Below, piece by piece: positions 303-50,904 of a stretch of DNA of 64,000 nt. Location of the stretch: positions 124,001 through 188,000 of IMG/VR virus record IMGVR_UViG_3300037725_000018; one strand, written 5' to 3'. The notes below the pieces were generated by a model. That model was given only the letters and a program-made list of their open reading frames with translations. It did not search any database and had not been told where the DNA came from. Each line of letters starts with the position of its first letter. Positions within the stretch are counted from its first letter, which is position 1. Made by a program: the position numbers and the translations under genes.

Positions 303-330
303 TCAAACAAGCCTTTTTTAAAACAGTTCC
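303..330 (-). promoter_or_regulatory. Class A promoter (GGAAC-N16-TGTTTGA), representative copy
   Basis: Fixed-spacing motif found about 29 times upstream of genes; CTTCACA further upstream. Confidence 0.65.
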
Positions 331-371
331 GATTTCAAATGTGAAGCTTCTGTTTAGAAACTTAGGTTCGT

Positions 372-584
372 TTAATCTTCATCATCTTCATTGTCGTCAT
401 TTTGGGAGCGGCTTTTGTCATTTGCCATAGCCCGAAGCTTTTTTGAATCTTGCCTGCTCTTCCAATACTTCTTTTGACTTTCTTCAGAAGCGGTGCCTTT
501 GAGCTTTTGCTTCATTTGATCGGTCTTCCCTTCTTTTTCTGCCTGCTCTTTTTTTTCTTTGAACTTATCAAAAAAATCTGACAT
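372..584 (-). CDS. Hypothetical charged protein
   Basis: ATG ORF co-oriented with neighbours. Confidence 0.65.
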   Translation of the reverse strand: MSDFFDKFKEKKEQAEKEGKTDQMKQKLKGTASEESQKKYWKSRQDSKKLRAMANDKSRSQNDDNEDDED

Positions 585-618
585 TATACTACGTTACATG
601 TTTTTAGATGTTATTTTA

Positions 619-813
619 TCAATTTAAAAGTAAATTTTCTCTCTGTATGCGGCTTCTAATAGCATATACTCGTTGAGAATATGTATACTTTACTTTGTCA
701 TTTATATATTTTGAATTAATTGTGAAGAAGAATATACTTCTTTCTCTAAGACTTAATATTTCAAGGTCTGGGAACTCGCTGGATTCATTTTCAGTTAGTA
801 TAACAATAGCCAT
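619..813 (-). CDS. Micro-protein, hydrophobic N-motif family (MAIVILTENE)
   Basis: Family N-terminal motif and size. Confidence 0.6.
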   Translation of the reverse strand: MAIVILTENESSEFPDLEILSLRERSIFFFTINSKYINDKVKYTYSQRVYAIRSRIQRENLLLN

Positions 814-821
814 CGCTGTTA

Positions 822-1280
822 TTAGCCATATCTGTTTTTAATTTTGTCTTTAAGCCCAAGACCACGGTTTACATCCACGATCATGTTTCTGACTCGACCC
901 GAATGGTTTTTCCATCCGGGCTTTTCGGTGTCTTCACCATTGAAGATTTTTTGAATAGCAAACGCGGTTGCCGGGGACCTGCTTTGCCCCGCTTGACAAT
1001 GAACGAAAATATTTTCAGCTTGTGCTTTGTGTTTGTTTACAAAATCAAGAATCTTTCGGGCGTGATACTTTTGAATTGGAAGAAAACGCCCACCAAAGTC
1101 GTCTTCGGAATCGTGAAAGCTTACATAGAGAACGTCCACAAACGCTTCTTCATTAAGGCTGGCGTTTTCAATATCCGGAGAAGATATAGAAATCATAATC
1201 GTATTCAACGGAACGTCTTCTTTTGTTAGACGTTCTGCTTCTCCACGATTAAAAACCCGGATACTTTTAAACTTTTTCAT
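822..1280 (-). CDS. Protein-tyrosine/dual-specificity phosphatase
   Basis: CX5R motif VHCQAGQSRS; upstream FHD loop. Confidence 0.85.
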   Translation of the reverse strand: MKKFKSIRVFNRGEAERLTKEDVPLNTIMISISSPDIENASLNEEAFVDVLYVSFHDSEDDFGGRFLPIQKYHARKILDFVNKHKAQAENIFVHCQAGQSRSPATAFAIQKIFNGEDTEKPGWKNHSGRVRNMIVDVNRGLGLKDKIKNRYG

Positions 1281-1329
1281 AGAATATAGACATTAATATT
1301 TGAATTGAAAACAGATAAAAATTTTATAG

Positions 1330-1743
1330 TGGACCCGGCGGGATTCGAACCCGCGTCCGCAGCACCTTTGCAACATCGGTTGTCACAGTCTTAGAATGGT
1401 CTTTATTTTTGACCGACAGACTATTGTATTAGACCACACAAAAGTTTGTGGGTTTTATTTCAACCCGCTATCGGACTTGTTTTACGTTCTGCCTACCAAG
1501 CAAAACAAGTTGAAGCCCAGTAGGAATATCCGATGGTGTGTGCCTTACTCTCTATCGGAGTCGAGAAGTAAGGCTGCAGTTACGCCGCAAGAGAAGCGCC
1601 GAAGTGCTCCTCCATGTTGACGCCTGCAGGAACGCGGTTAACGTTGCCAAGTATTGATTCCGTCAGTTATTTTATGCCCACCTAACGGTAAGGGCAGACT
1701 GCCGACCTTGCTCCGCGTGCTACGTCGAAGCCGTGTCAGGCCC
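1330..1743 (-). ncRNA. ssrA: tmRNA; tag ORF 1648-1580 encodes GNVNRVPAGVNMEEHFGASLAA*
   Basis: 5' GGGCCTGACACGGCTTCGAC, 3' GCGGGTTCGAATCCCGCCGGGTCCA; G3:U acceptor wobble; tag ends LAA-stop; CCA not encoded. Confidence 0.95.
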
Positions 1744-1822
1744 ATTATGTGAAAGAACCAAGAGGGATTAGACCTTACCGAAACTGAATCGGGGTTGCCC
1801 CTTTGCCTCTTTTTGCGTGTAA

Positions 1823-1850
1823 CTAAATGGTGCTGAAAACAAGTTGTTCC
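1823..1850 (-). promoter_or_regulatory. Class A promoter upstream of tmRNA (GGAAC-N16-CATTTAG)
   Basis: Matches repeated consensus. Confidence 0.6.
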
Positions 1851-1884
1851 CCGCGAAATAAATCTTCATAGAACCTTTAAAGAG

Positions 1885-1956
1885 TGGAGGATAGGGGAAT
1901 CGAACCCCTAACTCTGCCGTGCAAAAGCAGCGTGTTTCCGTTAGCACCAATCCCCC
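1885..1956 (-). tRNA. tRNA-Ala(TGC)
   Basis: Acceptor GGGGGAT/ATCCTCC with G3:U70; anticodon loop TT-TGC-AC; T-loop GGTTCGATTCC. Confidence 0.95.
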
Positions 1957-1966
1957 ATGTCAAAAC

Positions 1967-2203
1967 TTAATACCAGAAAAAACCGTTACATAGATGATCA
2001 ATAAGTTTGTCAATTTCATTTTCGGTGTACGTATTTGCTCCAAGCGGTTTGTCTACAACAATTTTGCCAAACCGCTCGTCAAAATAGATGTACACGTTTT
2101 CAACCTTCAAGCCTTCAACGCCACGGGAGCACTTTTTAATGTACTCAACTCCCGCGCCGTCAAGCTTGTTTTTAACAGCTTCAAGCATGTCTGCGATAGC
2201 CAT
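1967..2203 (-). CDS. Hypothetical protein
   Basis: ATG ORF with class A promoter (-35 at 2253-2257). Confidence 0.7.
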   Translation of the reverse strand: MAIADMLEAVKNKLDGAGVEYIKKCSRGVEGLKVENVYIYFDERFGKIVVDKPLGANTYTENEIDKLIDHLCNGFFWY

Positions 2204-2279
2204 TTGTTCGCCTTGATAACTACACTATCCTGCACGCAAAGGAGAAAGGCTTGTTTCGTGAAGGTTTTTTGAAGACCAC

Positions 2280-2495: not shown

Positions 2496-2719
2496 AACTT
2501 TTGTAAGTTTAGTTCATTCAGTTTCTTCTTCCGGGTGCGGGTTCTGATCTAAAATTTCATTGCGCTTGCTTTCAGGGAGCATAAGAAACTCGTGAAAGGC
2601 AAGATCGATTCCCCGCTCTTCAAAGTCTTCTTTAATACGATTGATCTTTTCCTGCTTGTCCATAACTTGTTTTGTGTGTTGTTTATATAGATAGCTAAAT
2701 TCTCGGTTGCGTAAATGGT

Positions 2720-3325
2720 CTACGCACTTTTTTGTTTCATCCGGGAAGTGATAAGTTCATGAAGCTTGTCTACATTATGGGTATTTACGTATTTGCTGAT
2801 ATACCTTCCTGACTTCGAAAACTGTCCCTTCGATTCCATCAAATACCTTTTTCGTTGATTAATTCGTCTTAGATTTGAAGAAGAAGTGCTGTGTACATTT
2901 TTAAACTCGAAGGAATGAATCGAAAGAAGGTCCGCAAATCCGGTGTTTTCAGCCAATAGGTCAAACTTGTTTTCAGGCCGAAAACATTTCGGTGTGGTGA
3001 CAAACATGTGTTTGTCAAAACCAAAGTTTGAATATTTTGCAAAACTTATAGCCTCCTGCAAGACATTTTCAGATACATGGTCAAAATCGTCCACATAAAT
3101 GAACAAACGCCGCGTTCGACCTCTCAATTTTTGAAAGCCTGAAAGAGAAGACAAAAACTTCGTAGGATTTCGAAAGTTAGACAACTTTCCACGTTTTCGT
3201 TTAAAGGAAGCTGTAGAGGTTGAAAGAAATACATGAATGCAATCTTGGTGATTTTGATCGTTCTCTTTAGCCTTTTGGATCAGTCTTGACGTTTTTCCGG
3301 TTTGTCGTCCACTAATTTCTAACAT
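2720..3325 (-). CDS. P-loop protein (degenerate terminase/helicase-like ATPase domain)
   Basis: ISGRQTGKT Walker A; IYVDDFD Walker B-like. Confidence 0.6.
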   Translation of the reverse strand: MLEISGRQTGKTSRLIQKAKENDQNHQDCIHVFLSTSTASFKRKRGKLSNFRNPTKFLSSLSGFQKLRGRTRRLFIYVDDFDHVSENVLQEAISFAKYSNFGFDKHMFVTTPKCFRPENKFDLLAENTGFADLLSIHSFEFKNVHSTSSSNLRRINQRKRYLMESKGQFSKSGRYISKYVNTHNVDKLHELITSRMKQKSA

Positions 3326-4636: not shown

Positions 4637-5004
4637 GTTATCGCATTGATATACTCTTTATAGAGTTCTCGTATGTCTTGAAACGGTCCTGTAGCGTCTC
4701 TGTGGTGATTAAGGATGTTATAGCAGAACGCAAGAATGTATCTGCTAAAATCGTCGTCTCGAAGATACAAAGAAGAAGACGTAAAGCTACCCACCCCGGC
4801 CTCGGTAAGTTCAATTTCAGAAAACCGAAGCGAGTCTTTCTCAAAACGAACTTCAACGGAAAGGTCATTTGTAAATTTGAAAACAACTTTCGGGTCTTCC
4901 GGATCTCCAAACCGAACAGACCGAAGTTCTTTTTGATCTAAACGCTCTTTGATTTCTTCGGTTTTTTCCCTTTCAAGTTTCTTTTTTCTTGCGCTCTTGC
5001 TCAT
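4633..5004 (-). CDS. Hypothetical protein
   Basis: Overlapping start/stop with neighbours. Confidence 0.7.
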   Translation of the reverse strand: MSKSARKKKLEREKTEEIKERLDQKELRSVRFGDPEDPKVVFKFTNDLSVEVRFEKDSLRFSEIELTEAGVGSFTSSSLYLRDDDFSRYILAFCYNILNHHRDATGPFQDIRELYKEYINAIT

Positions 5005-5678
5005 TCCGCTACATCAATAAGTTGCCAGCCGTTTTCGAGATAACCTTTTGCGTGCTTGTACTTCAACGTAGAAGCTCCAGATTGCTCTGTATCCGCTTCT
5101 TTTGTTGGTACGATAACAACCCTGTCGTTGCGACCGATCTTTTCTTTCAAGGACTTCTCGTAGGTGTTGCCCTTTCTCATTCGCCTGTCGAACATAAGAG
5201 TCCCGTTTAAGTGGTCGATTTCGTGTTGCACAGCAACAGACTCTAGAAGCTGTGGGTTTTCCATGTCCGGAAGCTCGTTGTCCGGGGTAGGTCCGAATCG
5301 AATACGGCTATCGTAGTTGTCAGACTCGACAAGAATGATTTGATTGCGCCGCGTCTCCACTTGCTCGTTCGGGAAGGAAAGACACCCTTCCACGTACCGC
5401 GCTTTTCGTTTTTGATCTACAATACGCGGGTTAACAAGATAAAACGGCTCCTGCACATTTACGACACAAATTCGTTTTTGAATTCCGATTTGAGGTGCAG
5501 AAATGCCAACGCCCCCTTTGTCACTTAACGTACGGAAAAGAGTAGCTGCAATCCGCTCTACATTATCTTCTTCTGTTACCGGATCGCTTTCTTGCTTTAA
5601 CTTTAGTTTGTCTGTAACAACAGGAACCGATTGAGGGTGTTCGTCTCCTGCAAGAATTCGTTCTACAAGGTCTTTCAT
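5001..5678 (-). CDS. def: Peptide deformylase
   Basis: GVGISAPQIG, EGCLS, QHEIDHLNG. Confidence 0.95.
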   Translation of the reverse strand: MKDLVERILAGDEHPQSVPVVTDKLKLKQESDPVTEEDNVERIAATLFRTLSDKGGVGISAPQIGIQKRICVVNVQEPFYLVNPRIVDQKRKARYVEGCLSFPNEQVETRRNQIILVESDNYDSRIRFGPTPDNELPDMENPQLLESVAVQHEIDHLNGTLMFDRRMRKGNTYEKSLKEKIGRNDRVVIVPTKEADTEQSGASTLKYKHAKGYLENGWQLIDVAE

Positions 5679-5958: not shown

Positions 5959-6864
5959 CTATCTTGTTAAGGCGTCGTATGCAGCCGACGTTTTTGGAAT
6001 ATTTTGCTTAATCCAATTTAGAACCTCTGCCTGTACTTCTGTATTTCGTTTGTAAGGTTTTCCAGCTTCTTTCAACGTTATGTATTTGAAGTCTTTAACA
6101 ACTCGCTTTCCAGCAAACGCTTCTTCTCTGTCTTCGGGGTCTTCCGGATAAACGTCTCTGGACGGGGGCTTGGTTTTAAAATCCCCTTCTCCTTCCGGAT
6201 CTTCAAAGAATACCGTGTGCTCCGGATTACCTAAGATAACACGAACACTTCCGTTTACGCCACTTGGAGTTCCGTTCCGGACAATATCGGTCATTGTATT
6301 TGCCGCCCCTTCATGAGTTTTAAGTACAATGTCGTCGGGCACAATTCGGTCGCGGTCTCTATTTCTCTGTACAGCTATGTGGTAATCGGTAAGAACCCAA
6401 GTAATATGAATATTTTGATCTTGGTATCCTACTTCTTTTAGGTCAGGAAGAACCTCTTTGATTTGGCCGATACGTTTTAACGTAACATCAAAAAGAAGGT
6501 TTGGAAGGCGTCTTTCGTCTCGACCTTTAAGAAGGTTTAGAATCCGTTTTTCTTTAAGGCCAAGTTCGTCTGCAAACCTGTGAAGTTTTGAAACGTCTTG
6601 GGGATTTGAAAGGTCAAGACCGTCAAGCTCGGGATATCTACCTTTTGCGTCGTTGATCTTTAGAAGAAGGTCCTTAAATTGATCAACGTCAATGATTCGG
6701 AATTTATTTCCCTCCATAAAGTTTGAAATTGCAAATCCTTTCCCGGACCCTGCGCCCCCGGCTAAGAATACGACTTGCCCGTGTCTTGCACCGTTGTTAT
6801 ACAGGATTTGCTTTTCCAACAAAATTTCTCTTGTCACTTCTCGAAGCAGGTCATTAAACTTCAT
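5959..6864 (-). CDS. Zeta-toxin-like P-loop kinase with candidate head-targeting N-terminus
   Basis: VFLAGGAGSGKG, IIDVD, LLFDVT, AVQRNRDRDRIVP; N-term MKFNDLLREVTREILLE. Confidence 0.7.
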   Translation of the reverse strand: MKFNDLLREVTREILLEKQILYNNGARHGQVVFLAGGAGSGKGFAISNFMEGNKFRIIDVDQFKDLLLKINDAKGRYPELDGLDLSNPQDVSKLHRFADELGLKEKRILNLLKGRDERRLPNLLFDVTLKRIGQIKEVLPDLKEVGYQDQNIHITWVLTDYHIAVQRNRDRDRIVPDDIVLKTHEGAANTMTDIVRNGTPSGVNGSVRVILGNPEHTVFFEDPEGEGDFKTKPPSRDVYPEDPEDREEAFAGKRVVKDFKYITLKEAGKPYKRNTEVQAEVLNWIKQNIPKTSAAYDALTR

Positions 6865-6936: not shown

Positions 6937-6947
6937 TTTATATATAG
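6937..6947 (-). promoter_or_regulatory. Class B (late-type) promoter CTATATATAAA
   Basis: cTATAwAT motif repeated about 9 times upstream of genes. Confidence 0.55.
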
Positions 6948-7873: not shown

Positions 7874-8218
7874 TTACTGCTCGTTCATTTGAGTTTTTAG
7901 GTTCACCGCTTTTTGCGCTAGTTCGTAATTCTCGACAGACTCTTGCGCCGAATAGTCAATGATTTGAGTAAGCATATGTTTTGTGTCTTCTCTATTAAGA
8001 CCATATGCTCGACTACCGTAAACGAAAACGTAAACCTCTTTTTTGCCCGTATCTATCATGTGCTGGATTCTATCATAGAGTTTTTGGTATATCTTTTCGG
8101 AGTTTTCTTTGAAGAAGCGTGCAATATTTTCTTCTTCCGGAACCACAATAAGCTTATCGGTATTGATGGTTCTTGTTTTTTCTGCGCTTTCCGGGTGTAG
8201 TCTTACGGAATTCTCCAT
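7874..8218 (-). CDS. Hypothetical protein with C-terminal UVR-like motif
   Basis: ENYELAQKAVNL. Confidence 0.6.
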   Translation of the reverse strand: MENSVRLHPESAEKTRTINTDKLIVVPEEENIARFFKENSEKIYQKLYDRIQHMIDTGKKEVYVFVYGSRAYGLNREDTKHMLTQIIDYSAQESVENYELAQKAVNLKTQMNEQ

Positions 8219-12986: not shown

Positions 12987-13484
12987 TTAAAAGCCCATAT
13001 CATCACCTTCTTCTTCGTCTTCCATTCCGATCACGTCAATGGGGTCTGACTCCAACTGTTCCCACTTGTGGTCTTGACGAAGAATCATAATGTGTACGTG
13101 CTCGCCTTTTTCCCCGTTTTCGTTTGTAACCTTCAAAGCATTTGGGTCAAAATAGTTTGAAAGGCCCGTCTTATTCATAAGCTTTCGGATATAGGTCAAA
13201 ACGTTTTCGGTTTTTTCAAACGTCTTGTCTGTAATTGTATACCGGATATACACGATGTCTTTTAAAGACGTGTACTTGGCACCGAAATACCGAACCATTA
13301 CATCTTTTACTCCCTTTTCAATTGCCTCTTTATGAAACTCGTCTCGAAAAGACTGAATTTCATCAATATACTCAGCCCGATCAATTTCAGTTTCGGCTTT
13401 TTTCTTTTGCCTGTCGTCTTTTACTTGACGCTGGATACTTTTTCGAATCCGGCGAAACTCTTTCTTTTTTTCTTCTGGTTTCAT
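12987..13484 (-). CDS. Hypothetical protein
   Basis: Co-oriented ORF overlapping next gene. Confidence 0.7.
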   Translation of the reverse strand: MKPEEKKKEFRRIRKSIQRQVKDDRQKKKAETEIDRAEYIDEIQSFRDEFHKEAIEKGVKDVMVRYFGAKYTSLKDIVYIRYTITDKTFEKTENVLTYIRKLMNKTGLSNYFDPNALKVTNENGEKGEHVHIMILRQDHKWEQLESDPIDVIGMEDEEEGDDMGF

Positions 13485-14333: not shown

Positions 14334-14404
14334 AATGACTTGTATTTTGTATTTAAGGGTAAAAGTGCAAGATAAAAACGGTCAGCTTTCGGTCTTGTTT
14401 CAAG

Positions 14405-14845
14405 CTACCTGTTTTGTCGTTCATAAATAATTAATGCTTTACAGTCAGATTCGCATTGTACGACGTGTTTTTGTCCCGGATCAATTGAAACTGAACCCAT
14501 AGACCCAACTGTTTTCGATTCGCCTTGTCCGGTAAGTTTCATTGAACCTTCTAAGATCAAGTAAAAAACACTTCGGTCTTCAATGTTTACCGTTTGTGGC
14601 TTCTTTTCTGAAATTTCATGATACCAACACTCGGTGTCTTCGTTTTTAAAAAGAAGCTTTCCGTTCCACGGAATCTTGTCCCCACAGCAAGGCGTCGGGT
14701 TTGAAGAGTTAATCTGTATACCTTTCAAATTTTCAAATATACCTTTTGCGTCACCGGGAACTTCTTTCATGATCTTTTTTTGAAGATCAACAATTTTTCC
14801 ATGTTCTTTGTTTAGATTGTCAATAAGTTCGTTAGAAGACTTCAT
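14405..14845 (-). CDS. Cupin-fold protein
   Basis: FYLILEGSMKL...SIDPGQKH; class B promoter near 14875. Confidence 0.65.
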   Translation of the reverse strand: MKSSNELIDNLNKEHGKIVDLQKKIMKEVPGDAKGIFENLKGIQINSSNPTPCCGDKIPWNGKLLFKNEDTECWYHEISEKKPQTVNIEDRSVFYLILEGSMKLTGQGESKTVGSMGSVSIDPGQKHVVQCESDCKALIIYERQNR

Positions 14846-14928
14846 TACATTGATTTGGCGTAGTTTATCTGTTTATATATAGACCCTTGCTGTACATACA
14901 AACGCAGACAAACCCGCCTGTCTTTTGA

Positions 14929-15900: not shown

Positions 15901-15984
15901 TGGCTTTGTTCTCTTGAATTAAAAGTCCCCTGTTTGCTCGCTACTTCAAACCCAAAAACACAAGACGTGTTCCGACCGGGAGTT

Positions 15985-16275
15985 TTAAGATCCGGTAAGC
16001 TCTCTTGCGGCATTTCGAATCTTCGGATCTTGAATTTGAATGGTTGAATAGTCGTCAATCACGTCTTCAAGTTTTCCGCAGAGCTTTCGATAACAAAGAG
16101 CCGCCTGCTGTTCGGAAAGCCCCTGCGTTTCCACTCCGTGACTTAACATAACCCGGTCAATGGCGTCCTCGATTTCTTCTTCTAAATCTTCGACAAGCGC
16201 CTTTCTTGAACTTGAACTAAGTTCCTCTTTTATGAGGGTTTCTTTCATTTTCTTTTTAAGGTCAAATTTTTTCAT
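15985..16275 (-). CDS. Hypothetical protein with candidate propeptide
   Basis: MKKFDLKKKMKETLIKEE. Confidence 0.7.
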   Translation of the reverse strand: MKKFDLKKKMKETLIKEELSSSSRKALVEDLEEEIEDAIDRVMLSHGVETQGLSEQQAALCYRKLCGKLEDVIDDYSTIQIQDPKIRNAARELTGS

Positions 16276-17879: not shown

Positions 17880-17994
17880 TGGAAAAATGGTTGGTCTTGA
17901 TTTCTTCTCTTTTTGGTAGCAAAATAGAAAACGGGCAAAAGAAACGCTTGTTCCCTTGCCCGTTTTCGGTCAACCAATATGTTTTCAAAAAAGA

Positions 17995-18874: not shown

Positions 18875-18991
18875 GATAGCTTGTGTAACCTATGTTTAAG
18901 TTTTGTTGATAATGTAACGGGTTTGTGTTTCTGTAGTGGTTAAAACCACAAGAGAGCGCCATTGTTTCGTGACGCCCCCTTGAAGTTTTTG

Positions 18992-23370: not shown

Positions 23371-23796
23371 TTATTCACTCATTTGAACAACCTCTATCCC
23401 GGCTTGTTCCAAAAATCGAAGAGATTCATCTTTTCTATACTTTTCTTCGTAGACAACGCGAACAATTCCGGCTTGGTGAACAAGCTTCGAGCAAGAAAGG
23501 CACGGCTGCATTGTGCAATAGATGGTGCCGCCCTCTGCGGAATTTGTGGATTTTGCAAGCTTTGTAATTGCATTTGATTCGGCGTGAAGCACAACGTCTT
23601 TTGTGCTTCCACTTTCATCTTCGCAGCAGTTTGTATGCCACCCGGCAGGAGTCCCGTTATAGCCTTCAGAAAGTATTTGTTTGTCTTTTACTACAATGGC
23701 CCCCACCTTCTTTCTTTCACACGTTGAGCGCCTGCTAACAACCTTAGCAATCTCCATATACATCCGGTCTAAGCTTATTCGGTTTACTGCTTCCAT
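23371..23796 (-). CDS. dCMP deaminase
   Basis: RSTC..KVGA, GYNG, HAE, PCLSC. Confidence 0.92.
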   Translation of the reverse strand: MEAVNRISLDRMYMEIAKVVSRRSTCERKKVGAIVVKDKQILSEGYNGTPAGWHTNCCEDESGSTKDVVLHAESNAITKLAKSTNSAEGGTIYCTMQPCLSCSKLVHQAGIVRVVYEEKYRKDESLRFLEQAGIEVVQMSE

Positions 23797-28546: not shown

Positions 28547-28655
28547 AATTGTAGTGCTTTGTTAGTCTTGTTAAGTAGCCAGTGATTTTCTGTCAATTCG
28601 CTTGCTTAAATGGTAGCAAGGGTTCTTTGTTTCCATATGTTCTGTGAAGCCTGTG

Positions 28656-31267: not shown

Positions 31268-31364
31268 AAAACAGTATATACTTTTTATTAGTTAGTGAAT
31301 GTTTTCGGTTTATTCTTTGGAAATCCTAAACAAACGGTATCGGGTCTTGTTTCTTGAAGTTTAT

Positions 31365-31565
31365 TTAAAGATACCCGCGCCTGTATATGTATCTCGTGAT
31401 TCCGTTTGCAGAGAGATTTGAAAACTGCATTTGTCTTCTAGAAAGGCTGTACGCGGTGAATCTAGGGTTCCGGGTTCCTTGAACGTACGAAGAAACAAGG
31501 CACCCCGAAGAAATCAAAGACATTACCGCTTCAAATTCCCTCTGTTTGTTGGTTAAAATTACCAT
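31365..31565 (-). CDS. Micro-protein family (MVILTNK)
   Basis: Family N-motif. Confidence 0.55.
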   Translation of the reverse strand: MVILTNKQREFEAVMSLISSGCLVSSYVQGTRNPRFTAYSLSRRQMQFSNLSANGITRYIYRRGYL

Positions 31566-31991: not shown

Positions 31992-32178
31992 GCTGGTTTT
32001 TTGGTTTTGAATGTGTATTCTACCTCTGTAAAACCAACTTAGAGCTTTTTTGTTTCATGAAGCTTTTGAAAACAAGTTCATAGGATCTTCATATTTTAGA
32101 TTGAAACCTGTTTCGGGTTTCTGCGTGTAACGTAGTGAAGTTAAGAGAGGGAACCCCTTACCAAACGGCTTAAAAAAG

Positions 32179-33172: not shown

Positions 33173-33326
33173 ATGATTAGCTAACTGCCTCCTTACTTAT
33201 GAATAATGTAATGTGGGGAAGGCGCGTTCACTTGCGCCTTCCCTGCTTTTTATTTGTGGGAACAACGGGCCAAAGGTTTGGTTTGTCCTGTGGCTTGACA
33301 AAAACAAAAGAAGAAAGGAAAAGATC

Positions 33327-33890
33327 ATGAAAGCATTAAAAACGATTTTTATTTTAACCATCGGGATCATGATTGGGATCTGGTTTGGGGCTCCGGAACC
33401 CGAAGTCAAAACCAAAACGATTGTGAAAACGAAAACTGTAGAGAGGTCTTCGCCAAAAGACCTTCACATGAACGCGGAATATTTGGCTTCGGCTCTGTAT
33501 TCGGAAACGAAAGATATGTCCAACTTTGAATACATCGCTTGGACAATTCGAAACCGTGTTGAAAGCGAAGACTACCCGGATACGGTTATGGACGTAATCC
33601 TGCAAGAGCACCAATTTTCCGCATTCAACACAAGAGAAGGGCGCGAAAAGTACCTTTCCCTAACGCTTCAAACCACGTCAAGCACGCACTACAGACGTGC
33701 TTACCGGGTTGCAAGGTACGTGCTAAACGCTCCAATGGAAGTTAATCCGATGGAGGGGGTAACACACTTCTTCATGGAAGACACCTTAAAACAGACGCAG
33801 GGGATCTCTCAGCCTTTTTGGGCCGAAGGCAAGACGCCGTATTTTGTGAACGGACAGACGAAGTATTACCGTGGCATCCGGGCACCGTAA
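33327..33890 (+). CDS. Second SleB-like cell wall hydrolase with N-terminal signal/TM
   Basis: LASALYSE, TIRNRV, YPDTV, HQFSAFN, THFF. Confidence 0.85.
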   Translation: MKALKTIFILTIGIMIGIWFGAPEPEVKTKTIVKTKTVERSSPKDLHMNAEYLASALYSETKDMSNFEYIAWTIRNRVESEDYPDTVMDVILQEHQFSAFNTREGREKYLSLTLQTTSSTHYRRAYRVARYVLNAPMEVNPMEGVTHFFMEDTLKQTQGISQPFWAEGKTPYFVNGQTKYYRGIRAP

Positions 33891-33967
33891 CGGCGGTCTT
33901 CGGAACAAGATTTAACTTTCGTCATTTATAAGATACGCAGTAACAGAAACCAACCACATAAAATAAA

Positions 33968-34873: not shown

Positions 34874-35142
34874 AAGGCGCTTGTTTGAAGGGAAGGGAAG
34901 GGCAAAGGCTCTTCCCTTCTTTCGTTTGTGCGTTCGTTCTGAACGTTTTGAAACCCTACATTCACCCGTTGCTATGAACCCTGCTGCTTTAAGCACACAG
35001 TCTGCACACGTCACCGAAGTAAACCTCAAAAAGTCTTTACATTCCGCGTCGGAACCAGCTTATAGCTAACGCATGTAATTAAGCGCAGAAAGGGGAGGGA
35101 GCTTTTCCTAAGACAGTTTCCCAAACAAAACCATTTGAGAAG

Positions 35143-41897: not shown

Positions 41898-42013
41898 GTT
41901 TCTGTTTGCTTTTATGAAGTTTCCTCTCTTTAAGCCAGTGCAATAAACAAGCGCCCCCCAAGGGTGTTCCCAAGGAAGACGCTCGTTTTGGTTTTTCAAT
42001 TGCAACTTCCTTT

Positions 42014-42184: not shown

Positions 42185-42237
42185 GAGCTTCGGTGGTTTT
42201 TGTTTTCTTTCCCTGTGCAACCTTGTAAACCCACAGC

Positions 42238-42510
42238 CTACGAGTATGTTTCACGAACGCACGTGAACGTTTCTTCCGGCCACGGGGGACCGGAGATTTC
42301 CCGAAGCTGCCTTCCGTCTTCATCAATCTCAAAGACTTCCACATCTTCGAGCTTCGCCTCTTCCCACGGGAACAGGTTTAGCTCCATGTGGGCTTGATTT
42401 CGAGCGTTGTCTACCGCCTTTTGTGGACTTGCACTTGACCGGGCATAGACAAACCCGTATCGGCCCGAGTCCTTGCCAGTTGCAACTGCCGATGCTTCGT
42501 AGGTAGCCAT
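42238..42510 (-). CDS. Hypothetical protein
   Basis: ATG ORF. Confidence 0.7.
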   Translation of the reverse strand: MATYEASAVATGKDSGRYGFVYARSSASPQKAVDNARNQAHMELNLFPWEEAKLEDVEVFEIDEDGRQLREISGPPWPEETFTCVRETYS

Positions 42511-42646
42511 TTGTTTCTTTTGTCTTTGTGAACAGGTTCTCTTTTCTAAGCCACTACAACAACAACAACAACAACAAACAAAAGGGAAGGGGAACTGCTC
42601 CCCTTCCCGTGTGAAGATTTGTTTAACTAGTGAAACTTAGCTTCAG

Positions 42647-43176: not shown

Positions 43177-43995
43177 AGGGTTAAGTGTTTGGGATGTTGC
43201 GGATTGTCTGCCGAAAAATGCGTGTGCTTAAAAAGGTGTTGGAAGATGAAGTTCCGTGAAGCTTGTGTGAAGTGTGAATACTCTGTGAAGAGGGAACACT
43301 TTGTTGGTTTGAAGGTTTAAGTTAGTGCAGGGGGAGGAATATCTTTTTTTGCGTAAGTAGATTCTGTGAAGTGGAATGAATATTGCTTCGGTAGCAAATT
43401 CCATTCCAACCCTTCCGGCAGGTGTTCATTCAATATTGATTTATGTTTCCTGTAGAGACTCAAGTAAACTTATTTTAGCCCCCAACCCTCTTAGACGCCG
43501 TTGAACGGGCTTTGGGCTTTTATTTGAATATTGAATATTGAATATTGAACGCCAAGTGCCAACCAACCTGCCTTCAGCGGCTACAGACGTAGATTCTATG
43601 TTTCTCGCTCGGGGTTTGGTAAACTTATTTATTGTTGGAACGGGTTTTGCTACCGTAGACATACAATAACACATCAAATACTATGCCACACCCCAAGGCA
43701 CATAGATCGCCTCTAAGCGGTTTAAGTGTTTGTAGGTATGTGGGGCAAGGCCATGTGGCGAAATCCACGCACACACGCGCACGTGCGCCCGTGAGGCTTG
43801 TCTTGATGTTAGCGGTGCAACGCTGTCCCCGCGTCTTTTGACACACGCTCCCTTGTGAGCTTAGGGACCTAAGTATGAGAAAAGATGCGGGGACGCTTTT
43901 CACGTGTCCCCGTTGACAGACGCCGAAGTTTTTTGATACACATTTGCCGGGTGGGAACAAACTTATAGTTTCCCCCGTTTTAGCGCCAAAAAAAG

Positions 43996-48028: not shown

Positions 48029-48152
48029 TTTTCAAGCCTTGTTTTATCGTTTGAAAACGACCTCCCCTTTCTTGCGTGTATATAAACTGGTGGCCCACTG
48101 GACGGTTCCAGTGGGCCACATGAAGATTCGGTAAAATAAAGCCCGTAGCCTG

Positions 48153-48359: not shown

Positions 48360-48400
48360 CGTCTTTTTGGGTTGGTTGGTAAAGGTCTTGTGGATTTGAT

Positions 48401-48634: not shown

Positions 48635-48734
48635 TGCGTTGGGAAGCTTTTAAGTTCAACAGGCGGCTTTGAAAAAAACGCCGGAAGGCGGGTTTCACCC
48701 CCCGGCGCGTTTGGCTACTTTTGATTTTGGATTA

Positions 48735-48959
48735 TTAGAAGAACTGTTCGTCAAGCCACTCCTCAACGATGTGGAATTCTTCGTCGGTGATCTTCTCACC
48801 GTCCTTTTCCCCATCGGAGGGGTAGTGCTCGATCCAAACGGCCCGTTCGACCTCGACGGACGTTTCCGCAGGGGAACGCCGCGTTGCCTTCATGTGGCTA
48901 ACGCTCATGTCAACTTCGATCACGCCGTCTTCGTGATGAACCGATTCGGTAACTGTCAT
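48735..48959 (-). CDS. Small acidic protein
   Basis: Class A promoter at 49047. Confidence 0.7.
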   Translation of the reverse strand: MTVTESVHHEDGVIEVDMSVSHMKATRRSPAETSVEVERAVWIEHYPSDGEKDGEKITDEEFHIVEEWLDEQFF

Positions 48960-49093
48960 GGCTGTAAGCTGCTTTTGTTTGAAAGATCAAACCCGAAGGG
49001 GCTTTCCCCCTTCTTGCGCTACTTTACACACGCGAAAAACGGATTGGTTCCCGGCCAAAGTGTGAAGCCTTTGTGAAGCCAAGCCCCGGCCCG

Positions 49094-49375
49094 TTAAAGA
49101 AGCTCACCGAGCCGGATCGGTTCCGGGGAAGAGCGGAGGGCTTCCCGCTCGCGCTTGCGGGACCGAAGCGCGGACATGCGCTTTTTGATGTTGCGCCTCT
49201 GCTCTTTGGCTTGCCGCTCTTTTTCGCGGCGAATGGCTTCTTTATACTCCGCTTTGGAGTCGTAAGAAGTCCAGTAGCGGCCCAAAGGCCCGTCCCACTC
49301 GATCCGCAGGCCATCAAAGTCGCTAAAGCGGGTGGAAGCGCGAACGGCTTTTTGGGTAGGCTCGCAAATATTCAT
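49094..49375 (-). CDS. Small basic protein
   Basis: Class A promoter at 49437. Confidence 0.65.
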   Translation of the reverse strand: MNICEPTQKAVRASTRFSDFDGLRIEWDGPLGRYWTSYDSKAEYKEAIRREKERQAKEQRRNIKKRMSALRSRKREREALRSSPEPIRLGELL

Positions 49376-49647
49376 TGTCTTTGGGGGATTGGTTCCCTCT
49401 CTTTCGCAATACCTTACACGCGGGGAAAGCGGGTCTGTTCCGGTTTAGGATGTGAAGAAGCTGTAAGCTCCTTCGGGCCTTTTGTTTTGCTTTTAAGCGT
49501 GTTTTGAACCTGCCTTTCCCCTACCCATTTCCACGGAGAGAAAAGTCCTTGTGGGCTTTCACAAAAACCTCAAAAGCCGCTGCGTAAAGGCGTGCCCCGC
49601 CGAAAATGGGCAGGGCACGCAGGCGCTACTTGCTTTTTTGGTTTCTT

Positions 49648-49860
49648 TTAAGCTTCCGGCGTGTAGGAAACAAACGCCGGGTCGCTTTCGCTTTCGAGCT
49701 TTTCGTCAATCCCGGAAAGCTCTTCCCGTTCGATCTTGTTGCGAACGTCGTAGTGAACCACGTCCCAACCACCACGGGCGTCAAGAAAGTAAATCACCTT
49801 CTCCCCCGGCTCGATGTGGTTTTCGGCGTAGTCACGCGCTTGGGCAAGAGTCATAACCAT
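49648..49860 (-). CDS. Small acidic protein
   Basis: Class A promoter at 49939. Confidence 0.7.
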   Translation of the reverse strand: MVMTLAQARDYAENHIEPGEKVIYFLDARGGWDVVHYDVRNKIEREELSGIDEKLESESDPAFVSYTPEA

Positions 49861-49990
49861 AGCAGCTTTAACTTTTTTGTTTGCTTGAAGGGGCCTTTCC
49901 CCGTCTTGCGTGTGTGTAAACCCACCGAAACCGGGGTTGTTTCGGTTTTGAATGTGAAGCGTCTGTGAAGGAAGGTTTCTTGGCAGACAT

Positions 49991-50028
49991 AAAAAAGCGG
50001 GTCACGGAAAGCCCGTGACCCGCTTTTT
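49991..50028. terminator. Bidirectional intrinsic terminator
   Basis: AAAAAAGCGGGTCACGG-AAAGC-CCGTGACCCGCTTTTT. Confidence 0.85.
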
Positions 50029-50047
50029 GGTTCTGTGTGGCTGACTT

Positions 50048-50350
50048 TTAGCTAAGAGAATCAAGGTAGCCGGAAAGAGCGCCAACCGAAAGCCGCTTGG
50101 ACTCTCCGGTTTTCATGTCGCTAACCTTCACGCGACCGTCTTCTTTAACGGAAAGCACGTAGCGGTCAAACTCTGCAATCGACCACCCGTGACGCTCTTC
50201 CCGAACGGTCGGGCCGAAAGAGATTCCCGTGACTTTAAGCTCGTCACGGCCAATCTTCTCCCCGGTGCTAATGTCCGGGTTGGTGTATCCGGCGCTGAAA
50301 AGCTTCTGGTTGGCTTTCCGGTAGATTTCGTTTTTGGCCTTGTCAGTCAT
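50048..50350 (-). CDS. Hypothetical protein (MTDKAK)
   Basis: Class A promoter at 50419. Confidence 0.7.
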   Translation of the reverse strand: MTDKAKNEIYRKANQKLFSAGYTNPDISTGEKIGRDELKVTGISFGPTVREERHGWSIAEFDRYVLSVKEDGRVKVSDMKTGESKRLSVGALSGYLDSLS

Positions 50351-50442
50351 GGGCTTTCTCTTTTGATGAGGGGTTTCCCTTCCTAAGTGCAATATGTAAA
50401 TGCGCTTTTATAGGAGCAGTTCCAAGCTCTCTTGTGAAGACT

Positions 50443-50754
50443 TTATGAAGACAGAGAGCTTTCAAGGTCTTCAATCACCATTTCAACGCGGCTTAAAACC
50501 GGGCTTTCCTTCTCTTCGGATACAGACGTTCGGTACATTTGTCCGGTCATTTCCATAAGCCTCTCGTACGCAAATCTAGACGGGCTTCCGTATGGAAACG
50601 TTTCCACGTCTTTCATGTCTTCTGCGTGAGCCGCCAAAACCTTGTACGTGGCCTTTAAGTCCGAATAGGTGCCACGGGTTATGATCGCCTCTTTTATCTT
50701 TCGAAAATGGCTTAGAAGGCGTTGTGCAACCTCTCGCTTGCGTTTGTCTTTCAT
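50443..50754 (-). CDS. Hypothetical protein (MKDKRK)
   Basis: Class A promoter at 50823. Confidence 0.7.
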   Translation of the reverse strand: MKDKRKREVAQRLLSHFRKIKEAIITRGTYSDLKATYKVLAAHAEDMKDVETFPYGSPSRFAYERLMEMTGQMYRTSVSEEKESPVLSRVEMVIEDLESSLSS

Positions 50755-50904
50755 GTCGGCTTGGTTTTGTTTTTCTAAAAGTAGAGTGAATGCGCGTACG
50801 TATACAAAAAGAAAAGGTCGGTGTTCCCGCCTTTTTTGGAACACACAAGGCCACCTGTTAGTTTGGGCCTCTTGTAGAAAGCCAACAAACAAAAAGCGAA
50901 ACCG

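What the first reader, a model, noticed from the sequence alone, without database searches (positions are those of the whole stretch)
303..50827. ECF-sigma-like promoter G(G/A)AAC-N16-NRT(T/G)T with upstream CTTCACA, about 29 copies
Seen, always in sense orientation upstream of genes with a 16-bp spacer. Minus-strand -35 boxes at 326, 1846, 2253, 5942, 14397, 15969, 17950, 18964, 27577, 28629, 31349, 41600, 41966, 42248, 43251, 47484, 48105, 49047, 49437, 49939, 50419, 50823; plus-strand at 32103, 32773, 33259, 33902, 34423, 35051, 35796. Many have CTTCAC(A) about one helical turn upstream, sometimes twice. Established: GGAAC/GAAAC -35 boxes with rigid spacers are typical of ECF sigma factors, and this is not the Bacteroidota housekeeping TTTG/TAnnTTTG pattern. 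Inference: an early/middle regulon driven by a phage-encoded or hijacked ECF-type sigma, with a possible activator box.
Basis: partly seen in the sequence, partly recalled or inferred. Interest (0 to 1): 0.65.

Follow-up and report, generated by a model that had tools for sequence, protein, structure and literature searches.

The report
ECF-type early promoters of a T4-like jumbo phage
About sixty copies of a promoter built like those read by bacterial stress (ECF) sigma factors drive the early and middle genes of an uncultured 223-kb T4-like phage, replacing the host-type promoters its relatives use, and no matching sigma factor gene can be found in the phage.

Summary
53 of 60 sites point with the local genes.

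Consensus: CTTCACA boxes in 11-bp phase, then G(G/A)AAC(A/C), N16, C(G/A)T(T/G)T(A/T)A, N6, and a conserved Y-G(C/A)A 34 nt after the first G of GGAAC. A purine-rich leader follows, and the ATG lies 54-125 nt downstream of GGAAC. This is canonical ECF geometry (GGAAC-N17-GTT).

The motif precedes prereplicative genes: helicase, RecA-like ATPase, RNA ligases, Pnk-like protein, chaperones, tRNAs, tmRNA and many small ORFs. It also precedes the phage's only sigma-like gene, a gp55-like protein that most likely reads a separate -10-only late motif, CTATATATAA.

The motif is kept in related phages with a similar or higher G+C (G156, L031, L033, L147). It is absent from 25 other relatives, and the low-GC ones use Bacteroidota sigmaA-type promoters instead.

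No canonical ECF sigma gene was found in the phage. The motif is not enriched in 156 Bacteroidota genomes. About a fifth of the copies embed a terminator hairpin, like T4 PeSL cassettes.

The reader of the motif is unresolved. A host ECF sigma is my leading guess. No transcript data could be obtained.

The parts
294..346 (-). E promoter (CTTCACA box, GGAAC at 326-330). Predicted start 296. Drives the RecA/KaiC-like 360-aa gene that ends the window's left edge.
   Evidence: 17.0 bits; Pfam for the gene
1814..1866 (-). E promoter upstream of the phage tmRNA gene (1327-1743).
   Evidence: 18.2 bits; tmRNA
2221..2273 (-). E promoter with the CTTCAC box abutting GAAAC. Drives a 78-aa ORF and tRNA-Ala (1884-1956).
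   Evidence: 21.3 bits; tRNA
2702..2754 (-).
   Evidence: 14.5 bits
5910..5962 (-). Best-scoring E promoter. Heads an operon that includes peptide deformylase (5001-5678).
   Evidence: 31.3 bits; best hit of model R1; PHROG
13026..13078 (-). E-like site before the metallophosphoesterase gene (12306-12965). It lies in the 3' end of the upstream ORF.
   Evidence: 17.8 bits; PHROG
14365..14417 (-).
   Evidence: Below 14 bits after refinement; sequence
15937..15989 (-). E promoter of the HD + AAA_33 (Pnk-like) gene, 14929-15900.
   Evidence: 26.1 bits; Pfam
17918..17970 (-). E promoter with an embedded hairpin. Drives the T4 Rnl1-type RNA ligase gene, 16722-17879.
   Evidence: 25.3 bits; hairpin -17 kcal/mol; Pfam
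18932..18984 (-). E promoter inside a strong hairpin placed just after the ClpB-like gene. Drives a 108-aa ORF.
   Evidence: 16.6 bits; hairpin -20.7 kcal/mol
23374..23426 (-). Drives a 93-aa ORF. Its near-palindromic mirror at 23384(+) is probably not functional.
   Evidence: 26.5 bits and 17.8 bits
27545..27597 (-). Weak E site before the 633-aa CobT-like gene, 25558-27459.
   Evidence: 14.7 bits; PHROG
28597..28649 (-). E promoter with a CTTCACA box. Drives the MoxR/CbbQ-type AAA gene, 27596-28546.
   Evidence: 22.3 bits; Pfam
31317..31369 (-). E promoter of a 79-aa ORF followed by a DnaJ gene.
   Evidence: 18.1 bits; DnaJ
32087..32139 (+). E promoter, the first of the plus-strand block. 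Drives a 190-aa ORF whose G156 ortholog is also preceded by the motif.
   Evidence: 24.9 bits
32757..32809 (+). E promoter embedded in a terminator-like hairpin. Drives a 110-aa ORF.
   Evidence: 27.6 bits; hairpin -24.5 kcal/mol
33243..33295 (+).
   Evidence: Below 14 bits after refinement
33886..33938 (+). E promoter of a 140-aa ORF.
   Evidence: 18.0 bits
34407..34459 (+). E promoter with a CTTCACA box and an embedded hairpin. Drives a 124-aa ORF.
   Evidence: 24.9 bits; hairpin -21.3 kcal/mol
35035..35087 (+). E promoter of a 128-aa ORF whose G156 ortholog also has the motif 85 nt upstream.
   Evidence: 25.3 bits
35780..35832 (+). E promoter heading a run of small plus-strand ORFs.
   Evidence: 22.2 bits
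41568..41620 (-). Hairpin plus T-run with GGAAC in the loop. Weak as a promoter; mainly terminator-like.
41934..41986 (-). E promoter inside a strong hairpin. Drives an 89-aa ORF.
   Evidence: 22.8 bits; hairpin -25.0 kcal/mol
42216..42268 (-). E promoter of a 56-aa ORF.
   Evidence: 24.6 bits
42768..42820 (-). E-like site within an ORF. Function doubtful.
   Evidence: 18.8 bits; next ORF start is 294 nt away
43219..43271 (-).
43277..43329 (+). Good match on the plus strand, divergent from 43251 and sharing the box cluster in inverted form. Role unclear.
   Evidence: 23.7 bits
47452..47504 (-). E promoter/terminator composite before a 159-aa ORF.
   Evidence: 14.1 bits; hairpin seen
48073..48125 (-). 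E promoter/terminator composite before a 69-aa ORF.
   Evidence: 15.2 bits
49015..49078 (-). E promoter with two CTTCACA boxes 11 bp apart. Drives a 74-aa ORF.
   Evidence: 30.8 bits; boxes
49405..49457 (-). E promoter with a CTTCACA box. Drives a 93-aa ORF.
   Evidence: 29.2 bits
49907..49970 (-). E promoter with two CTTCACA boxes 11 bp apart. Drives a 70-aa ORF.
   Evidence: 25.3 bits
50387..50439 (-). Slightly below the refined threshold but it has every element.
50791..50843 (-). E promoter of a 103-aa ORF.
   Evidence: 18.8 bits
6939..6946 (-). The other promoter class, T4-late-like and -10-only (C-TATATATA-A), 82 nt before the 301-aa gene 5959-6864. Given for contrast.
14874..14881 (-). 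Late-like C-TATATATA-A motif 36 nt before the 146-aa gene 14405-14845.

Best explanation
The motif is the prereplicative (early/middle) promoter of an uncultured T4-like jumbo myovirus whose host is probably a Bacteroidota bacterium. It is a two-block sigma70-family promoter of the ECF type: a -35 element G(G/A)AAC(A/C), a rigid 16-bp spacer, and a -10 element C(G/A)T(T/G)T(A/T)A. Transcription is predicted to start at the conserved G 34 nt after the first G of GGAAC. Host core RNA polymerase carrying an ECF-type sigma factor reads it. That sigma is neither the host housekeeping sigmaA nor, most likely, the phage's gp55-like sigma. My leading guess is a host ECF sigma that is present or released at infection; a phage factor that sequence searches cannot recognise is the main alternative. 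CTTCACA boxes in 10-11-bp phase at -5, -15 and -26 from GGAAC probably bind an accessory activator, or a regulator that also sits just downstream of some late promoters. One E promoter drives the gp55-like sigma gene, whose product then reads the -10-only late promoters (CTATATATAA) before structural genes. The result is a T4-like cascade. In about a fifth of the copies a G+C-rich hairpin fills the spacer and the T-rich -10 serves as its U-tract, so a single ~50-bp cassette ends one small gene and starts the next, as T4 PeSL cassettes do. Shown: the motif, its statistics, orientation, gene class and conservation; the absence of a canonical sigma; the gp55-like fold. Inferred: the start site, the sigma class, the host origin of the sigma, and the role of the boxes.
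For: Motif statistics and controls. Orientation and intergenic placement. Ungapped consensus with conserved Y-G at +33/+34 and a purine-rich leader. The geometry equals published ECF consensus sequences (sigmaH GGAAc-N17-GTT, sigmaR GGAAT-N18-GTT, as quoted in 10.1101/172254). Bacteroidota ECF genes in MAGs show (G/T)TAAC-N16-CGTC upstream, the same geometry. Genes driven are of the early/middle kind: UvrD/Dda-like helicase, RecA/KaiC-like ATPase, Pnk-like protein, Rnl1 and Rnl2 ligases, MoxR/CobT pair, peptide deformylase, DnaJ, tRNAs, tmRNA and many small ORFs. Conservation: three sense intergenic sites in L031; sites in L033 including a double CTTCAC box; 33 sites in the 263-kb phage G156, at a different G+C, with the same boxes and GCA start; orthologous genes keep the promoter in both phages; in the 93%-identical L147 the -35 and RTTT blocks are kept while the spacer changed. 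It replaces sigmaA-type promoters: TTG-N18-21-TAnnTTTG is enriched in motif-lacking relatives (G166 90 vs 37, G165 52 vs 26, and a clear family in Mel-JY01) but not in motif-bearing genomes (G000 21 vs 34, G156 9 vs 6). gp55-like sigma: immuto ORF with a weak phrog_234 hit is homologous to g103; fold match to T4 gp55 at Z 10.9 and to sigma region 2; an E site 64 nt before its ATG; the late motif lacks a -35 and lies before structural genes; TATATATA, TATAAATA or ATATTTAT follows the sigma gene in relatives. Hairpins. PeSL precedent: PMC4122927.
Against: No sigma that could read the motif has been identified. The motif is at chance level in 5 + 151 Bacteroidota genomes, and the chance hits there are not upstream of sigma genes. 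The precise matrix is not enriched upstream of 30 sigma genes from five MAGs. A phage whose first transcription depends on a normally sequestered ECF sigma has no precedent known to me. The gp55-like family aligns with ECF sigmas over both domains by HHalign (88%, E 3e-6), so it could in principle read a -35/-10 promoter. The host is unknown; Bacteroidota is inferred from relatives, MAG bins and leaders without Shine-Dalgarno sequences.
Confidence: 0.5

Rival explanations
1. The phage's own gp55-like sigma (g103, genome 74431-75204, outside the window) reads the motif. The family is really a two-domain ECF-like sigma, the gene is autoregulated from its own E promoter as ECF genes usually are, and the E class is therefore 'middle'. 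The TATATATA motif would be read by something else.
For: HHalign of the family against a Bacteroidota ECF profile gives 88%, E 2.9e-6, spanning both ECF domains. The AF2 model has two helical domains joined by a disordered linker. One member is named 'sigma24 family' by JGI. A strong E site lies directly upstream of the gene in G000 and L147.
Against: The family is present in at least 568 viral contigs, including 25 scanned records, immuto and Mel-JY01, which all lack the motif. An AT-rich -10-only motif accompanies the family everywhere it was looked for. The best fold match is T4 gp55. The C-terminal domain alone has no significant sigma region 4 match (best Z 5.4). There is a bootstrapping problem: no sigmaA-type or other early promoter exists to make the first sigma. 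In L031-L034 the gene has no promoter of its own.
Confidence: 0.15
2. A phage-encoded factor specific to this sub-clade reads or enables the motif. It could be an unrecognisably divergent sigma, possibly carried in the virion, or a sigma-appropriation pair in the manner of T4 MotA/AsiA that retargets host sigmaA. The CTTCACA or GGAAC box would be its binding site.
For: The motif is restricted to one sub-clade (G000, G156, L031, L033, L147). 60 G000 proteins are shared with G156 but not with the motif-lacking genomes G165 and G166, and most have no known function. One of them, the 188-aa g123, is E-driven in both phages and has a weak WYL-like fold, as some transcription regulators do. The gp55-like sigma itself was invisible to Pfam, so another could be too. 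The phased boxes suggest a DNA-binding protein.
Against: No sigma, MotA or classical regulator domain was found in 175 proteins of 95-330 aa or in the sub-clade-specific set. No paralog of g103 exists. Single-sequence HHalign against an ECF profile finds nothing, but at low power. The -10 block does not resemble the Bacteroidota sigmaA -7 element that an appropriation mechanism would keep. Motif-bearing phages also differ in G+C from motif-lacking ones (43-49% against 29-35%), which fits a host difference equally well.
Confidence: 0.22
3. The repeats are not promoters. They would be intrinsic terminators with a conserved loop, or recombination/mobile cassettes, or sites for a DNA-binding protein unrelated to initiation.
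For: 9-13 of 53 copies hold strong hairpins followed by T-runs. A bacterial terminator with GGAAC in its loop matched the model by chance (L065). PeSLs are proposed recombination points (PMC4122927).
Against: Some 40 copies have no hairpin, yet keep both blocks, the fixed spacing, the Y-G site and a leader at a fixed distance from the ATG. Mean fold energy is only modestly below controls. Copies precede tRNA and tmRNA genes and the first genes of operons. The two blocks, not the spacer, are conserved between phages of 43% and 49% G+C.
Confidence: 0.06

Closest known systems
ECF (group 4) sigma promoters, e.g. E. coli sigmaE, B. subtilis sigmaW, M. tuberculosis sigmaH, S. coelicolor sigmaR
   Same: A -35 element with an AAC core (GGAAC), a rigid 16-17-bp spacer, a -10 element with a CGT/GTT core, and little else conserved. 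The geometry is identical to the consensus sequences quoted in 10.1101/172254.
   Different: About 60 copies lie in a phage genome, heading most prereplicative transcription units. No cognate ECF sigma or anti-sigma gene lies nearby or anywhere in the genome. There is an extended T-rich -10 (TTTAA), a conserved G(C/A)A start, phased upstream CTTCACA boxes, and often an embedded terminator.
PeSL (promoter-early stem-loop) cassettes of T4-like phages (Arbiol 2010, PMC2839356; Comeau 2014, PMC4122927)
   Same: The setting is a T4-like myovirus. Short composite terminator/promoter units flank small, variable early ORFs, many per genome.
   Different: In PeSLs the promoter is of the host sigma70 type and, by my recollection, the stem-loop lies beside it. 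Here the promoter is ECF-type, the hairpin sits inside the spacer, and only about a fifth of the copies have one. A role in recombination was not tested.
Phage-encoded ECF-like or alternative sigmas with their own promoter classes (phiEco32 gp36, PMC12276001 and PMC8948821; SPO1 gp28/gp34, PMC13401047)
   Same: A phage-specific promoter class differs from the host housekeeping consensus and drives a temporal class of genes.
   Different: Those phages encode a recognisable sigma, made from host-type early promoters, that reads middle or late genes. Here no host-type early promoters and no such sigma are found, and the motif heads the earliest-looking genes.
T4 middle promoters (MotA box plus AsiA-remodelled sigma70; review PMC2988021)
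   Same: A T4-like phage has a phage-specific box replacing the host -35 and driving prereplicative genes, tRNAs and the late sigma gene.
   Different: The -10 block is not the host (Bacteroidota) -7 element. No MotA domain was seen among proteins of 95-330 aa. Proteins of AsiA size were not scanned.
T4 gp55-dependent late promoters (TATAAATA)
   Same: This applies to the second motif of this genome (CTATATATAA, -10-only, before structural genes) and to the gp55-like protein g103.
   Different: It is not the motif under study. g103 is about 70 residues longer than gp55 and aligns with ECF sigmas over a C-terminal domain as well.
Bacteroidota sigmaA promoters (TTG/TTTG at -33, TAnnTTTG at -7)
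   Same: They are used by relatives of this phage (Mel-JY01, G165, G166) in what appears to be the equivalent role.
   Different: They are absent as a class from this genome and from G156. The two promoter types appear mutually exclusive among the genomes examined.

Membership tests
ECF-sigma-dependent promoter | -35 element containing the AAC core (GGAAC-like) | tested here: met
   G, A, A, C is invariant in the selected sites, with G/A at position 2 and A/C at position 6. Invariance is partly a result of selection, but the literal pattern is 3.4-fold over shuffles.
ECF-sigma-dependent promoter | -10 element with a CGT/GTT core at a rigid 16-17-bp distance | tested here: met
   Counts are C 30/53, G/A 53/53, T 52/53, T 42/53 at +21 to +24. 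An ungapped alignment of 44 sites holds the register.
ECF-sigma-dependent promoter | Transcription starts 6-9 nt after the -10 element | not testable with these tools
The only support is a conserved pyrimidine-G at +33/+34 (43/53 G), in the right place.
ECF-sigma-dependent promoter | A cognate ECF sigma (sigma2 + sigma4 domains) exists that recognises it, usually autoregulated and paired with an anti-sigma | tested here: not met
   Tested in the phage only. Sigma70_r2 gives no hit at E<=10. The r4/r4_2 hits are homing endonucleases. No sigma domain was found in 175 scanned proteins. The only sigma-like protein is gp55-like. A host sigma could not be tested because the host is unknown.
ECF-sigma-dependent promoter | The motif occurs in the host genome upstream of the sigma's own regulon | tested here: inconclusive
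   156 Bacteroidota genomes give hits at the chance rate (16 of 151 with one hit at E<=0.1), none before sigma genes. The model's power for a small regulon in a 5-Mb genome is low, and the true host may not have been sampled.
PeSL cassette of T4-like phages | The genome is a T4-like myovirus | tested here: met
   Portal_T4 E 3e-74, tail sheath, gp25, prohead protease S77, clamp loader, SbcCD-like nuclease and a gp55-like sigma.
PeSL cassette of T4-like phages | Composite of a stem-loop terminator and an early promoter between small ORFs | tested here: inconclusive
   Met for 9-13 of 53 copies (hairpins of -10 to -26 kcal/mol ending at the T-rich -10). The other copies have no hairpin.
PeSL cassette of T4-like phages | The promoter part matches the host housekeeping sigma consensus | tested here: not met
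   There is no resemblance to TTG...TAnnTTTG, and that pattern is not enriched in the genome.
PeSL cassette of T4-like phages | Cassettes mark indel or replacement boundaries between close relatives | not tested
   Only structural-region loci of near-identical relatives were available (L021-L024, L147).
T4 MotA/AsiA middle promoter | The host sigma -10 element is retained and a phage activator box replaces the -35 | tested here: not met
   The -10 block CGTTTAA is unlike the Bacteroidota -7 element TAnnTTTG.
T4 MotA/AsiA middle promoter | MotA and AsiA homologs are encoded | tested here: inconclusive
   No MotA domain appears among the listed Pfam hits for proteins of 95-330 aa (7 families of one set were not displayed). 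Proteins under 95 aa were not scanned.
T4 gp55-type late sigma (for protein g103, not for the motif) | Sigma region-2-like fold closest to gp55, with a -10-only AT-rich late promoter before structural genes | tested here: met
   7d7c_F gives Z 10.9 over 115 residues; sigma region 2 domains give Z 8-10 at rmsd 2.3-3 A. The C-TATATATA-A motif has no upstream block. Recognition itself was not tested.
Bacteroidota sigmaA promoter | TTG/TTTG at -33 and TAnnTTTG at -7 | tested here: not met

The most novel reading that the evidence does not exclude
A sub-clade of T4-like jumbo phages of Bacteroidota has given up host-housekeeping early promoters altogether. It runs its whole pre-late programme on a host ECF sigma factor, for instance one released by the envelope damage of infection itself, with a phased upstream activator site. 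This would be the first phage whose immediate-early transcription depends on hijacking an ECF stress sigma. Equally novel would be a virion-delivered or otherwise unrecognisable sigma of a new family.
Probability: 0.3. Interest if true: 0.85.

Novelty: new variant of a known kind. Interest (0 to 1): 0.62.

Why it matters
T4-like phages are the textbook case of a virus that starts by mimicking the host's strongest housekeeping promoters. Here a whole sub-clade, in a family found on at least 568 metagenomic viral contigs, appears to have swapped that class for ECF-type promoters, while sister phages keep the Bacteroidota sigmaA type.

If a host ECF sigma is used, infection would be wired to a stress pathway, which bears on host range, timing and defence. 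If a hidden phage factor is used, it is a new sigma or sigma-appropriation family.

In either case the 50-bp cassettes are compact, portable promoter/terminator parts for Bacteroidota, a phylum with few genetic tools. The finding also gives a concrete way to look for the host: find the genome whose ECF sigma gene carries this promoter.

Tried and rejected
- Close cultured relatives by DNA or by the 1066-aa protein: none.
- Canonical sigma in the phage: Sigma70_r2, r4_2, phrog_234 and phrog_12791 six-frame searches found nothing useful. The r4 hits are GIY-YIG homing endonucleases.
- g103 against Pfam, PHROGs and PDB sequences: nothing.
- Fold of the g103 C-terminal domain alone: only noise-level matches.
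- Housekeeping-promoter idea: the motif model is at chance in 5 MAGs that carry related phage contigs and in 151 Bacteroidota genomes. The chance hits are not before sigma genes. The precise matrix is not enriched before 30 Bacteroidota sigma genes.
- A third, host-type early promoter class: inspection of 109 motif-free upstream gaps showed mostly tRNA genes and spurious ORFs and no sigmaA-type family.
- RecA-like protein as bait for orthologous upstream regions: the patterns were too generic and returned unrelated P-loop proteins. These served only as a negative control.
- Collection-wide DNA pattern scan for the motif: not run, because every pattern with enough specified bases would give hundreds of chance hits.
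- Sub-clade-specific proteins as the factor: the best conserved are an Rnl2-type ligase, a deaminase, a metallopeptidase and a zinc-ribbon protein. g123 is WYL-like, not sigma-like.
- Single-sequence HHalign of 116 proteins against an ECF profile: nothing, but g103 itself scores only 3.7% this way, so the test has little power. A first attempt timed out.
- My greedy ORF caller (ATG only, longest first) picks some wrong-strand ORFs. The 'intergenic' and 'co-oriented' counts are therefore conservative.

Full report
**What the window is.**
The window is bases 124001-188000 of a 223,357-bp IMG/VR virus record rated complete, with 43.5% G+C. The record is a distant T4-like myovirus. It encodes a T4 gp20-type portal (E 3e-74), tail sheath, gp25, prohead protease, clamp loader and a fused SbcCD-like nuclease. 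It also carries about 40 tRNA genes and a tmRNA gene.

The nearest cultured relatives by portal are Microcystis phage Mel-JY01 (47%), Flavobacterium phage immuto (45%) and Rhodothermus phage RM378 (32%). Start codons are preceded by A-rich sequence without a Shine-Dalgarno motif. Contigs carrying the clade's sigma-like gene are binned mostly into Bacteroidota MAGs: Saprospirales, Cyclobacteriaceae, Flavobacteriales and Bacteroidia. A Bacteroidota host is therefore likely but not shown.

**Checking the observation.**

| Test | Observed | Control |
|---|---|---|
| Literal two-block pattern, window | 36 | 10.7 in shuffles |
| CTTCACA, window | 29 | 8.9 in shuffles |
| Matrix from the 29 sites, whole genome, >14 bits | 55 | 2-6 in shuffles |
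| Refined matrix, >14 bits | 60 | 4.7 in shuffles |
| Refined matrix, >16 bits | 56 | 1.4 in shuffles |
| Same matrix, 374 kb of unrelated viral DNA | 2 (>14 bits), 0 (>16 bits) | - |

- 24 of the 29 listed sites pass 14 bits. The other five are degenerate copies. Five or six further sites in the window were missed.
- The sites follow the gene blocks. Plus-strand sites lie only in the two plus-strand blocks, and 53 of 60 agree with the local orientation (p = 4e-10).
- 30 of 56 sites lie in called intergenic DNA against 6.8 expected. 50 of 56 have an ATG-initiated ORF within 125 nt.

**Anatomy.**
An ungapped alignment gives this order of elements:
- T-T-c-A-c-a at -15 to -10, the CTTCACA box;
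- G-(G/A)-A-A-C-(A/C)-A at 0 to +6;
- a variable 14-nt stretch;
- C-(G/A)-T-(T/G)-T-(A/T)-A at +21 to +27;
- A-(G)-(T/C)-G-(C/A)-A at +31 to +36, with G at +34 in 43 of 53 sites;
- a purine-rich stretch at +40 to +47, and an A/C-rich leader up to the ATG.

The box begins at -15 in 18 of 53 sites (0.97 expected). Further copies lie at -26/-27 and at -5, which is 10-11-bp phasing. Sometimes the box is inverted. The same heptamer, inverted, follows several late promoters.

Nine to thirteen sites hold a strong hairpin (-10 to -26 kcal/mol) whose 5' arm or loop contains GGAAC and whose 3' end abuts the T-rich second block. The remaining sites have none.

**What it drives.**
Downstream genes include:
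- a UvrD/Dda-like helicase and a RecA/KaiC-like ATPase;
- an HD + AAA_33 Pnk-like protein, and Rnl1- and Rnl2-type RNA ligases;
- a MoxR/CobT-like pair, peptide deformylase, a metallophosphoesterase and DnaJ;
- tRNA clusters and the tmRNA;
- dozens of 50-190-aa ORFs of unknown function.

This is the content of T4 early and middle transcription units. Structural modules are instead preceded by a different motif, C-TATATATA-A. It lies 30-60 nt before the ATG and has no conserved upstream block, like T4 late promoters.

**The sigma question.**
- Six-frame searches with Sigma70_r2 find nothing. The r4 and r4_2 hits are GIY-YIG homing endonucleases.
- Pfam scans of 175 proteins of 95-330 aa show no sigma, MotA or classical regulator domain.
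- T4 gp55 profiles also miss. However, an immuto ORF with a weak gp55 hit has a clear homolog in this genome: g103, at 74431-75204 on the minus strand, 257 aa.
- The g103 family has at least 497 metagenomic members without any Pfam domain and occurs on at least 568 IMG/VR contigs.
- Its AlphaFold model has two helical domains. The best structural match is T4 gp55 (Z 10.9), followed by many sigma region 2 domains.
- A profile comparison with 18 Bacteroidota ECF sigmas gives 88% probability over both domains. The C-terminal domain alone has no significant fold match.
- g103 has no paralog. It lies before the baseplate genes in all relatives. In this genome it is preceded by one of the best E sites.

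**Comparative evidence.**
The E motif is conserved in these relatives:
- L031 (sigma 58% identical): three sites, all sense and intergenic.
- L033: sites that include the double box.
- L147 (93% identical): both blocks kept, spacer changed.
- G156, a complete 263-kb phage with 48.7% G+C and sigma 45% identical: 33 matrix hits with boxes, both blocks and the GCA start. Several lie before orthologs of genes that are E-driven here.

A sequence-only covariance model of 44 sites finds 37 hits in this genome. It finds none in immuto, Mel-JY01 and RM378, and none, apart from a single hit in one record, in 25 other records of the clade, four of them complete.

The motif-lacking genomes are AT-rich and show the Bacteroidota sigmaA pattern above its control:

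| Genome | E motif | TTG-N18-21-TAnnTTTG | Control |
|---|---|---|---|
| G166 | lacking | 90 | 37 |
| G165 | lacking | 52 | 26 |
| Mel-JY01 | lacking | an obvious family | - |
| G000 (this genome) | present | 21 | 34 |
| G156 | present | 9 | 6 |

AT-rich -10-only motifs (TATATATA, TATAAATA, ATATTTAT, CTATTTAA) occur in both groups, notably right after the sigma gene. The gp55-like sigma and a TATA-type late motif are therefore universal in the clade. The E motif and sigmaA-type promoters are alternatives.

This is the main reason I assign g103 to the late motif. I take E to play the role that host-type early promoters play in the sister phages.

**Is it a host housekeeping promoter?**
No, as far as could be tested. 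Five MAGs that carry related phage contigs, and 151 genomes drawn across the phylum, give hits at the chance rate. None has more than one at E<=0.1. These hits are not before sigma genes. Bacteroidota MAGs encode 7-35 sigma70-family genes each (21-35 in four of the five), and some show (G/T)TAAC-N16-CGTC upstream. The geometry is therefore native to the phylum, although the exact matrix is not enriched there.

Published ECF consensus sequences (GGAAc-N17-GTT and relatives) match the E core. An ECF-like motif accounts for about 5% of mapped starts in Chlorobaculum, which belongs to the related green sulfur bacteria (10.1101/172254).

**Mechanism proposed.**
*Shown:* a conserved, oriented, rigidly spaced two-block element at a fixed distance before prereplicative genes. 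It is specific to one sub-clade, alternates with sigmaA-type promoters, and is sometimes fused to a terminator hairpin.

*Inferred:*
- It is a promoter read by core RNA polymerase with an ECF-type sigma, starting at the G at +34.
- The sigma is most likely the host's (about 0.4). Otherwise it is an unrecognised sub-clade-specific phage factor (about 0.2) or g103 itself (about 0.15).
- The CTTCACA repeats bind an accessory protein.
- The hairpin-containing copies act as terminator and promoter in one cassette. This is the functional analogue of T4 PeSLs (PMC4122927, PMC2839356).
- The E promoter before g103 links the early/middle class to the late class.

**Limits.**
- No transcript data could be obtained.
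- The host is unknown.
- ORF calls are crude.
- Pfam scans covered proteins of 95-330 aa plus the largest ones.
- The search for a hidden factor among the 60 sub-clade-specific proteins was shallow.

**Verdict.**
The 'phage-encoded ECF sigma' is not found.

The feature is a new variant of known kinds: ECF promoters, phage-specific promoter classes and T4 PeSL cassettes. The unusual point is that it seems to replace host-type early promoters in a whole sub-clade.

Noticed in passing
window 6939-6946, 14874-14881, 2682-2689; genome-wide about 16-20 sites (e.g. genome 360, 17405, 35795, 52942, 70186, 197685): A second promoter-like class, C-TATATATA-A, with no -35 element. It lies 30-60 nt before structural genes and resembles T4 late promoters. 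In five sites an inverted CTTCAC-type box (GTGAA) follows within 12 nt.
   Followed up: partly
genome 74431-75204 (-), = L014:2434-3204; outside the window: A gp55-like sigma of a large family without Pfam annotation (at least 497 proteins, at least 568 IMG/VR contigs). It aligns with ECF sigmas over two domains. A conserved 93-98-aa gene always precedes it and might be a gp33 analogue.
   Followed up: partly
record PP395634.1 (Microcystis phage Mel-JY01), e.g. 62957-69478 and 142995-150702: This phage, reported on a cyanobacterium, carries about 25 copies of a textbook Bacteroidota promoter (TTGCATAC...CGTAnnTTTG). Its portal is 47% identical to this Bacteroidota-type clade. The true host may be a Bacteroidota bacterium.
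   Followed up: no
window 1327-1743 (-): A phage-encoded tmRNA (Rfam 91 bits) with its own E promoter. ARAGORN predicts an unusually long tag peptide.
   Followed up: no
genome about 205-216 kb (L019/L020), outside the window: A sialic-acid gene set: NeuB, a CMP-sugar cytidylyltransferase, three GT29 sialyltransferase-like proteins and a GT25 protein. This is unusual cargo for a phage.
   Followed up: no
genome 24048, 25841, 58835 and 194175 upstream regions; window 7874-8218 upstream: A recurrent ACATAAGTT / AAGTTATA motif (about 9-fold enriched) before some large structural genes. It may be a further promoter variant.
   Followed up: no
genome 85042-85608 (-), = L014:13045-13608: A 188-aa protein, 59% identical in G156 and absent from motif-lacking relatives, E-driven in both phages, with a weak WYL_2-like predicted fold. 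It is a candidate regulator.
   Followed up: partly
genome 1-80 kb (one member of alignment A4): A weak hit to an ADP-ribosyltransferase family (Tox-ART-HYD1, E 8e-4). This could be an Alt/Mod-like modifier of RNA polymerase. The protein was not pinned down.
   Followed up: no
window 42520-42610 (-): A hairpin with GGAGC in place of GGAAC, followed by a (TTG)n run of about 20 nt and then an E-type leader. It looks like a decayed or variant cassette.
   Followed up: no
record LR756508.1 (484-kb uncultured phage), 15741, 70989, 365670, 408051, 417069, 447499 (+): Six weak matches to the E model, all on one strand (E 0.02-0.3). This is possibly a related promoter class in a huge phage.
   Followed up: no
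genome 79298-79828 (+): A 176-aa ORF on the opposite strand to its neighbours, next to a tRNA-Met gene, with a zinc ribbon and a C-terminal HTH. It is probably a mobile or regulatory insertion.
   Followed up: partly
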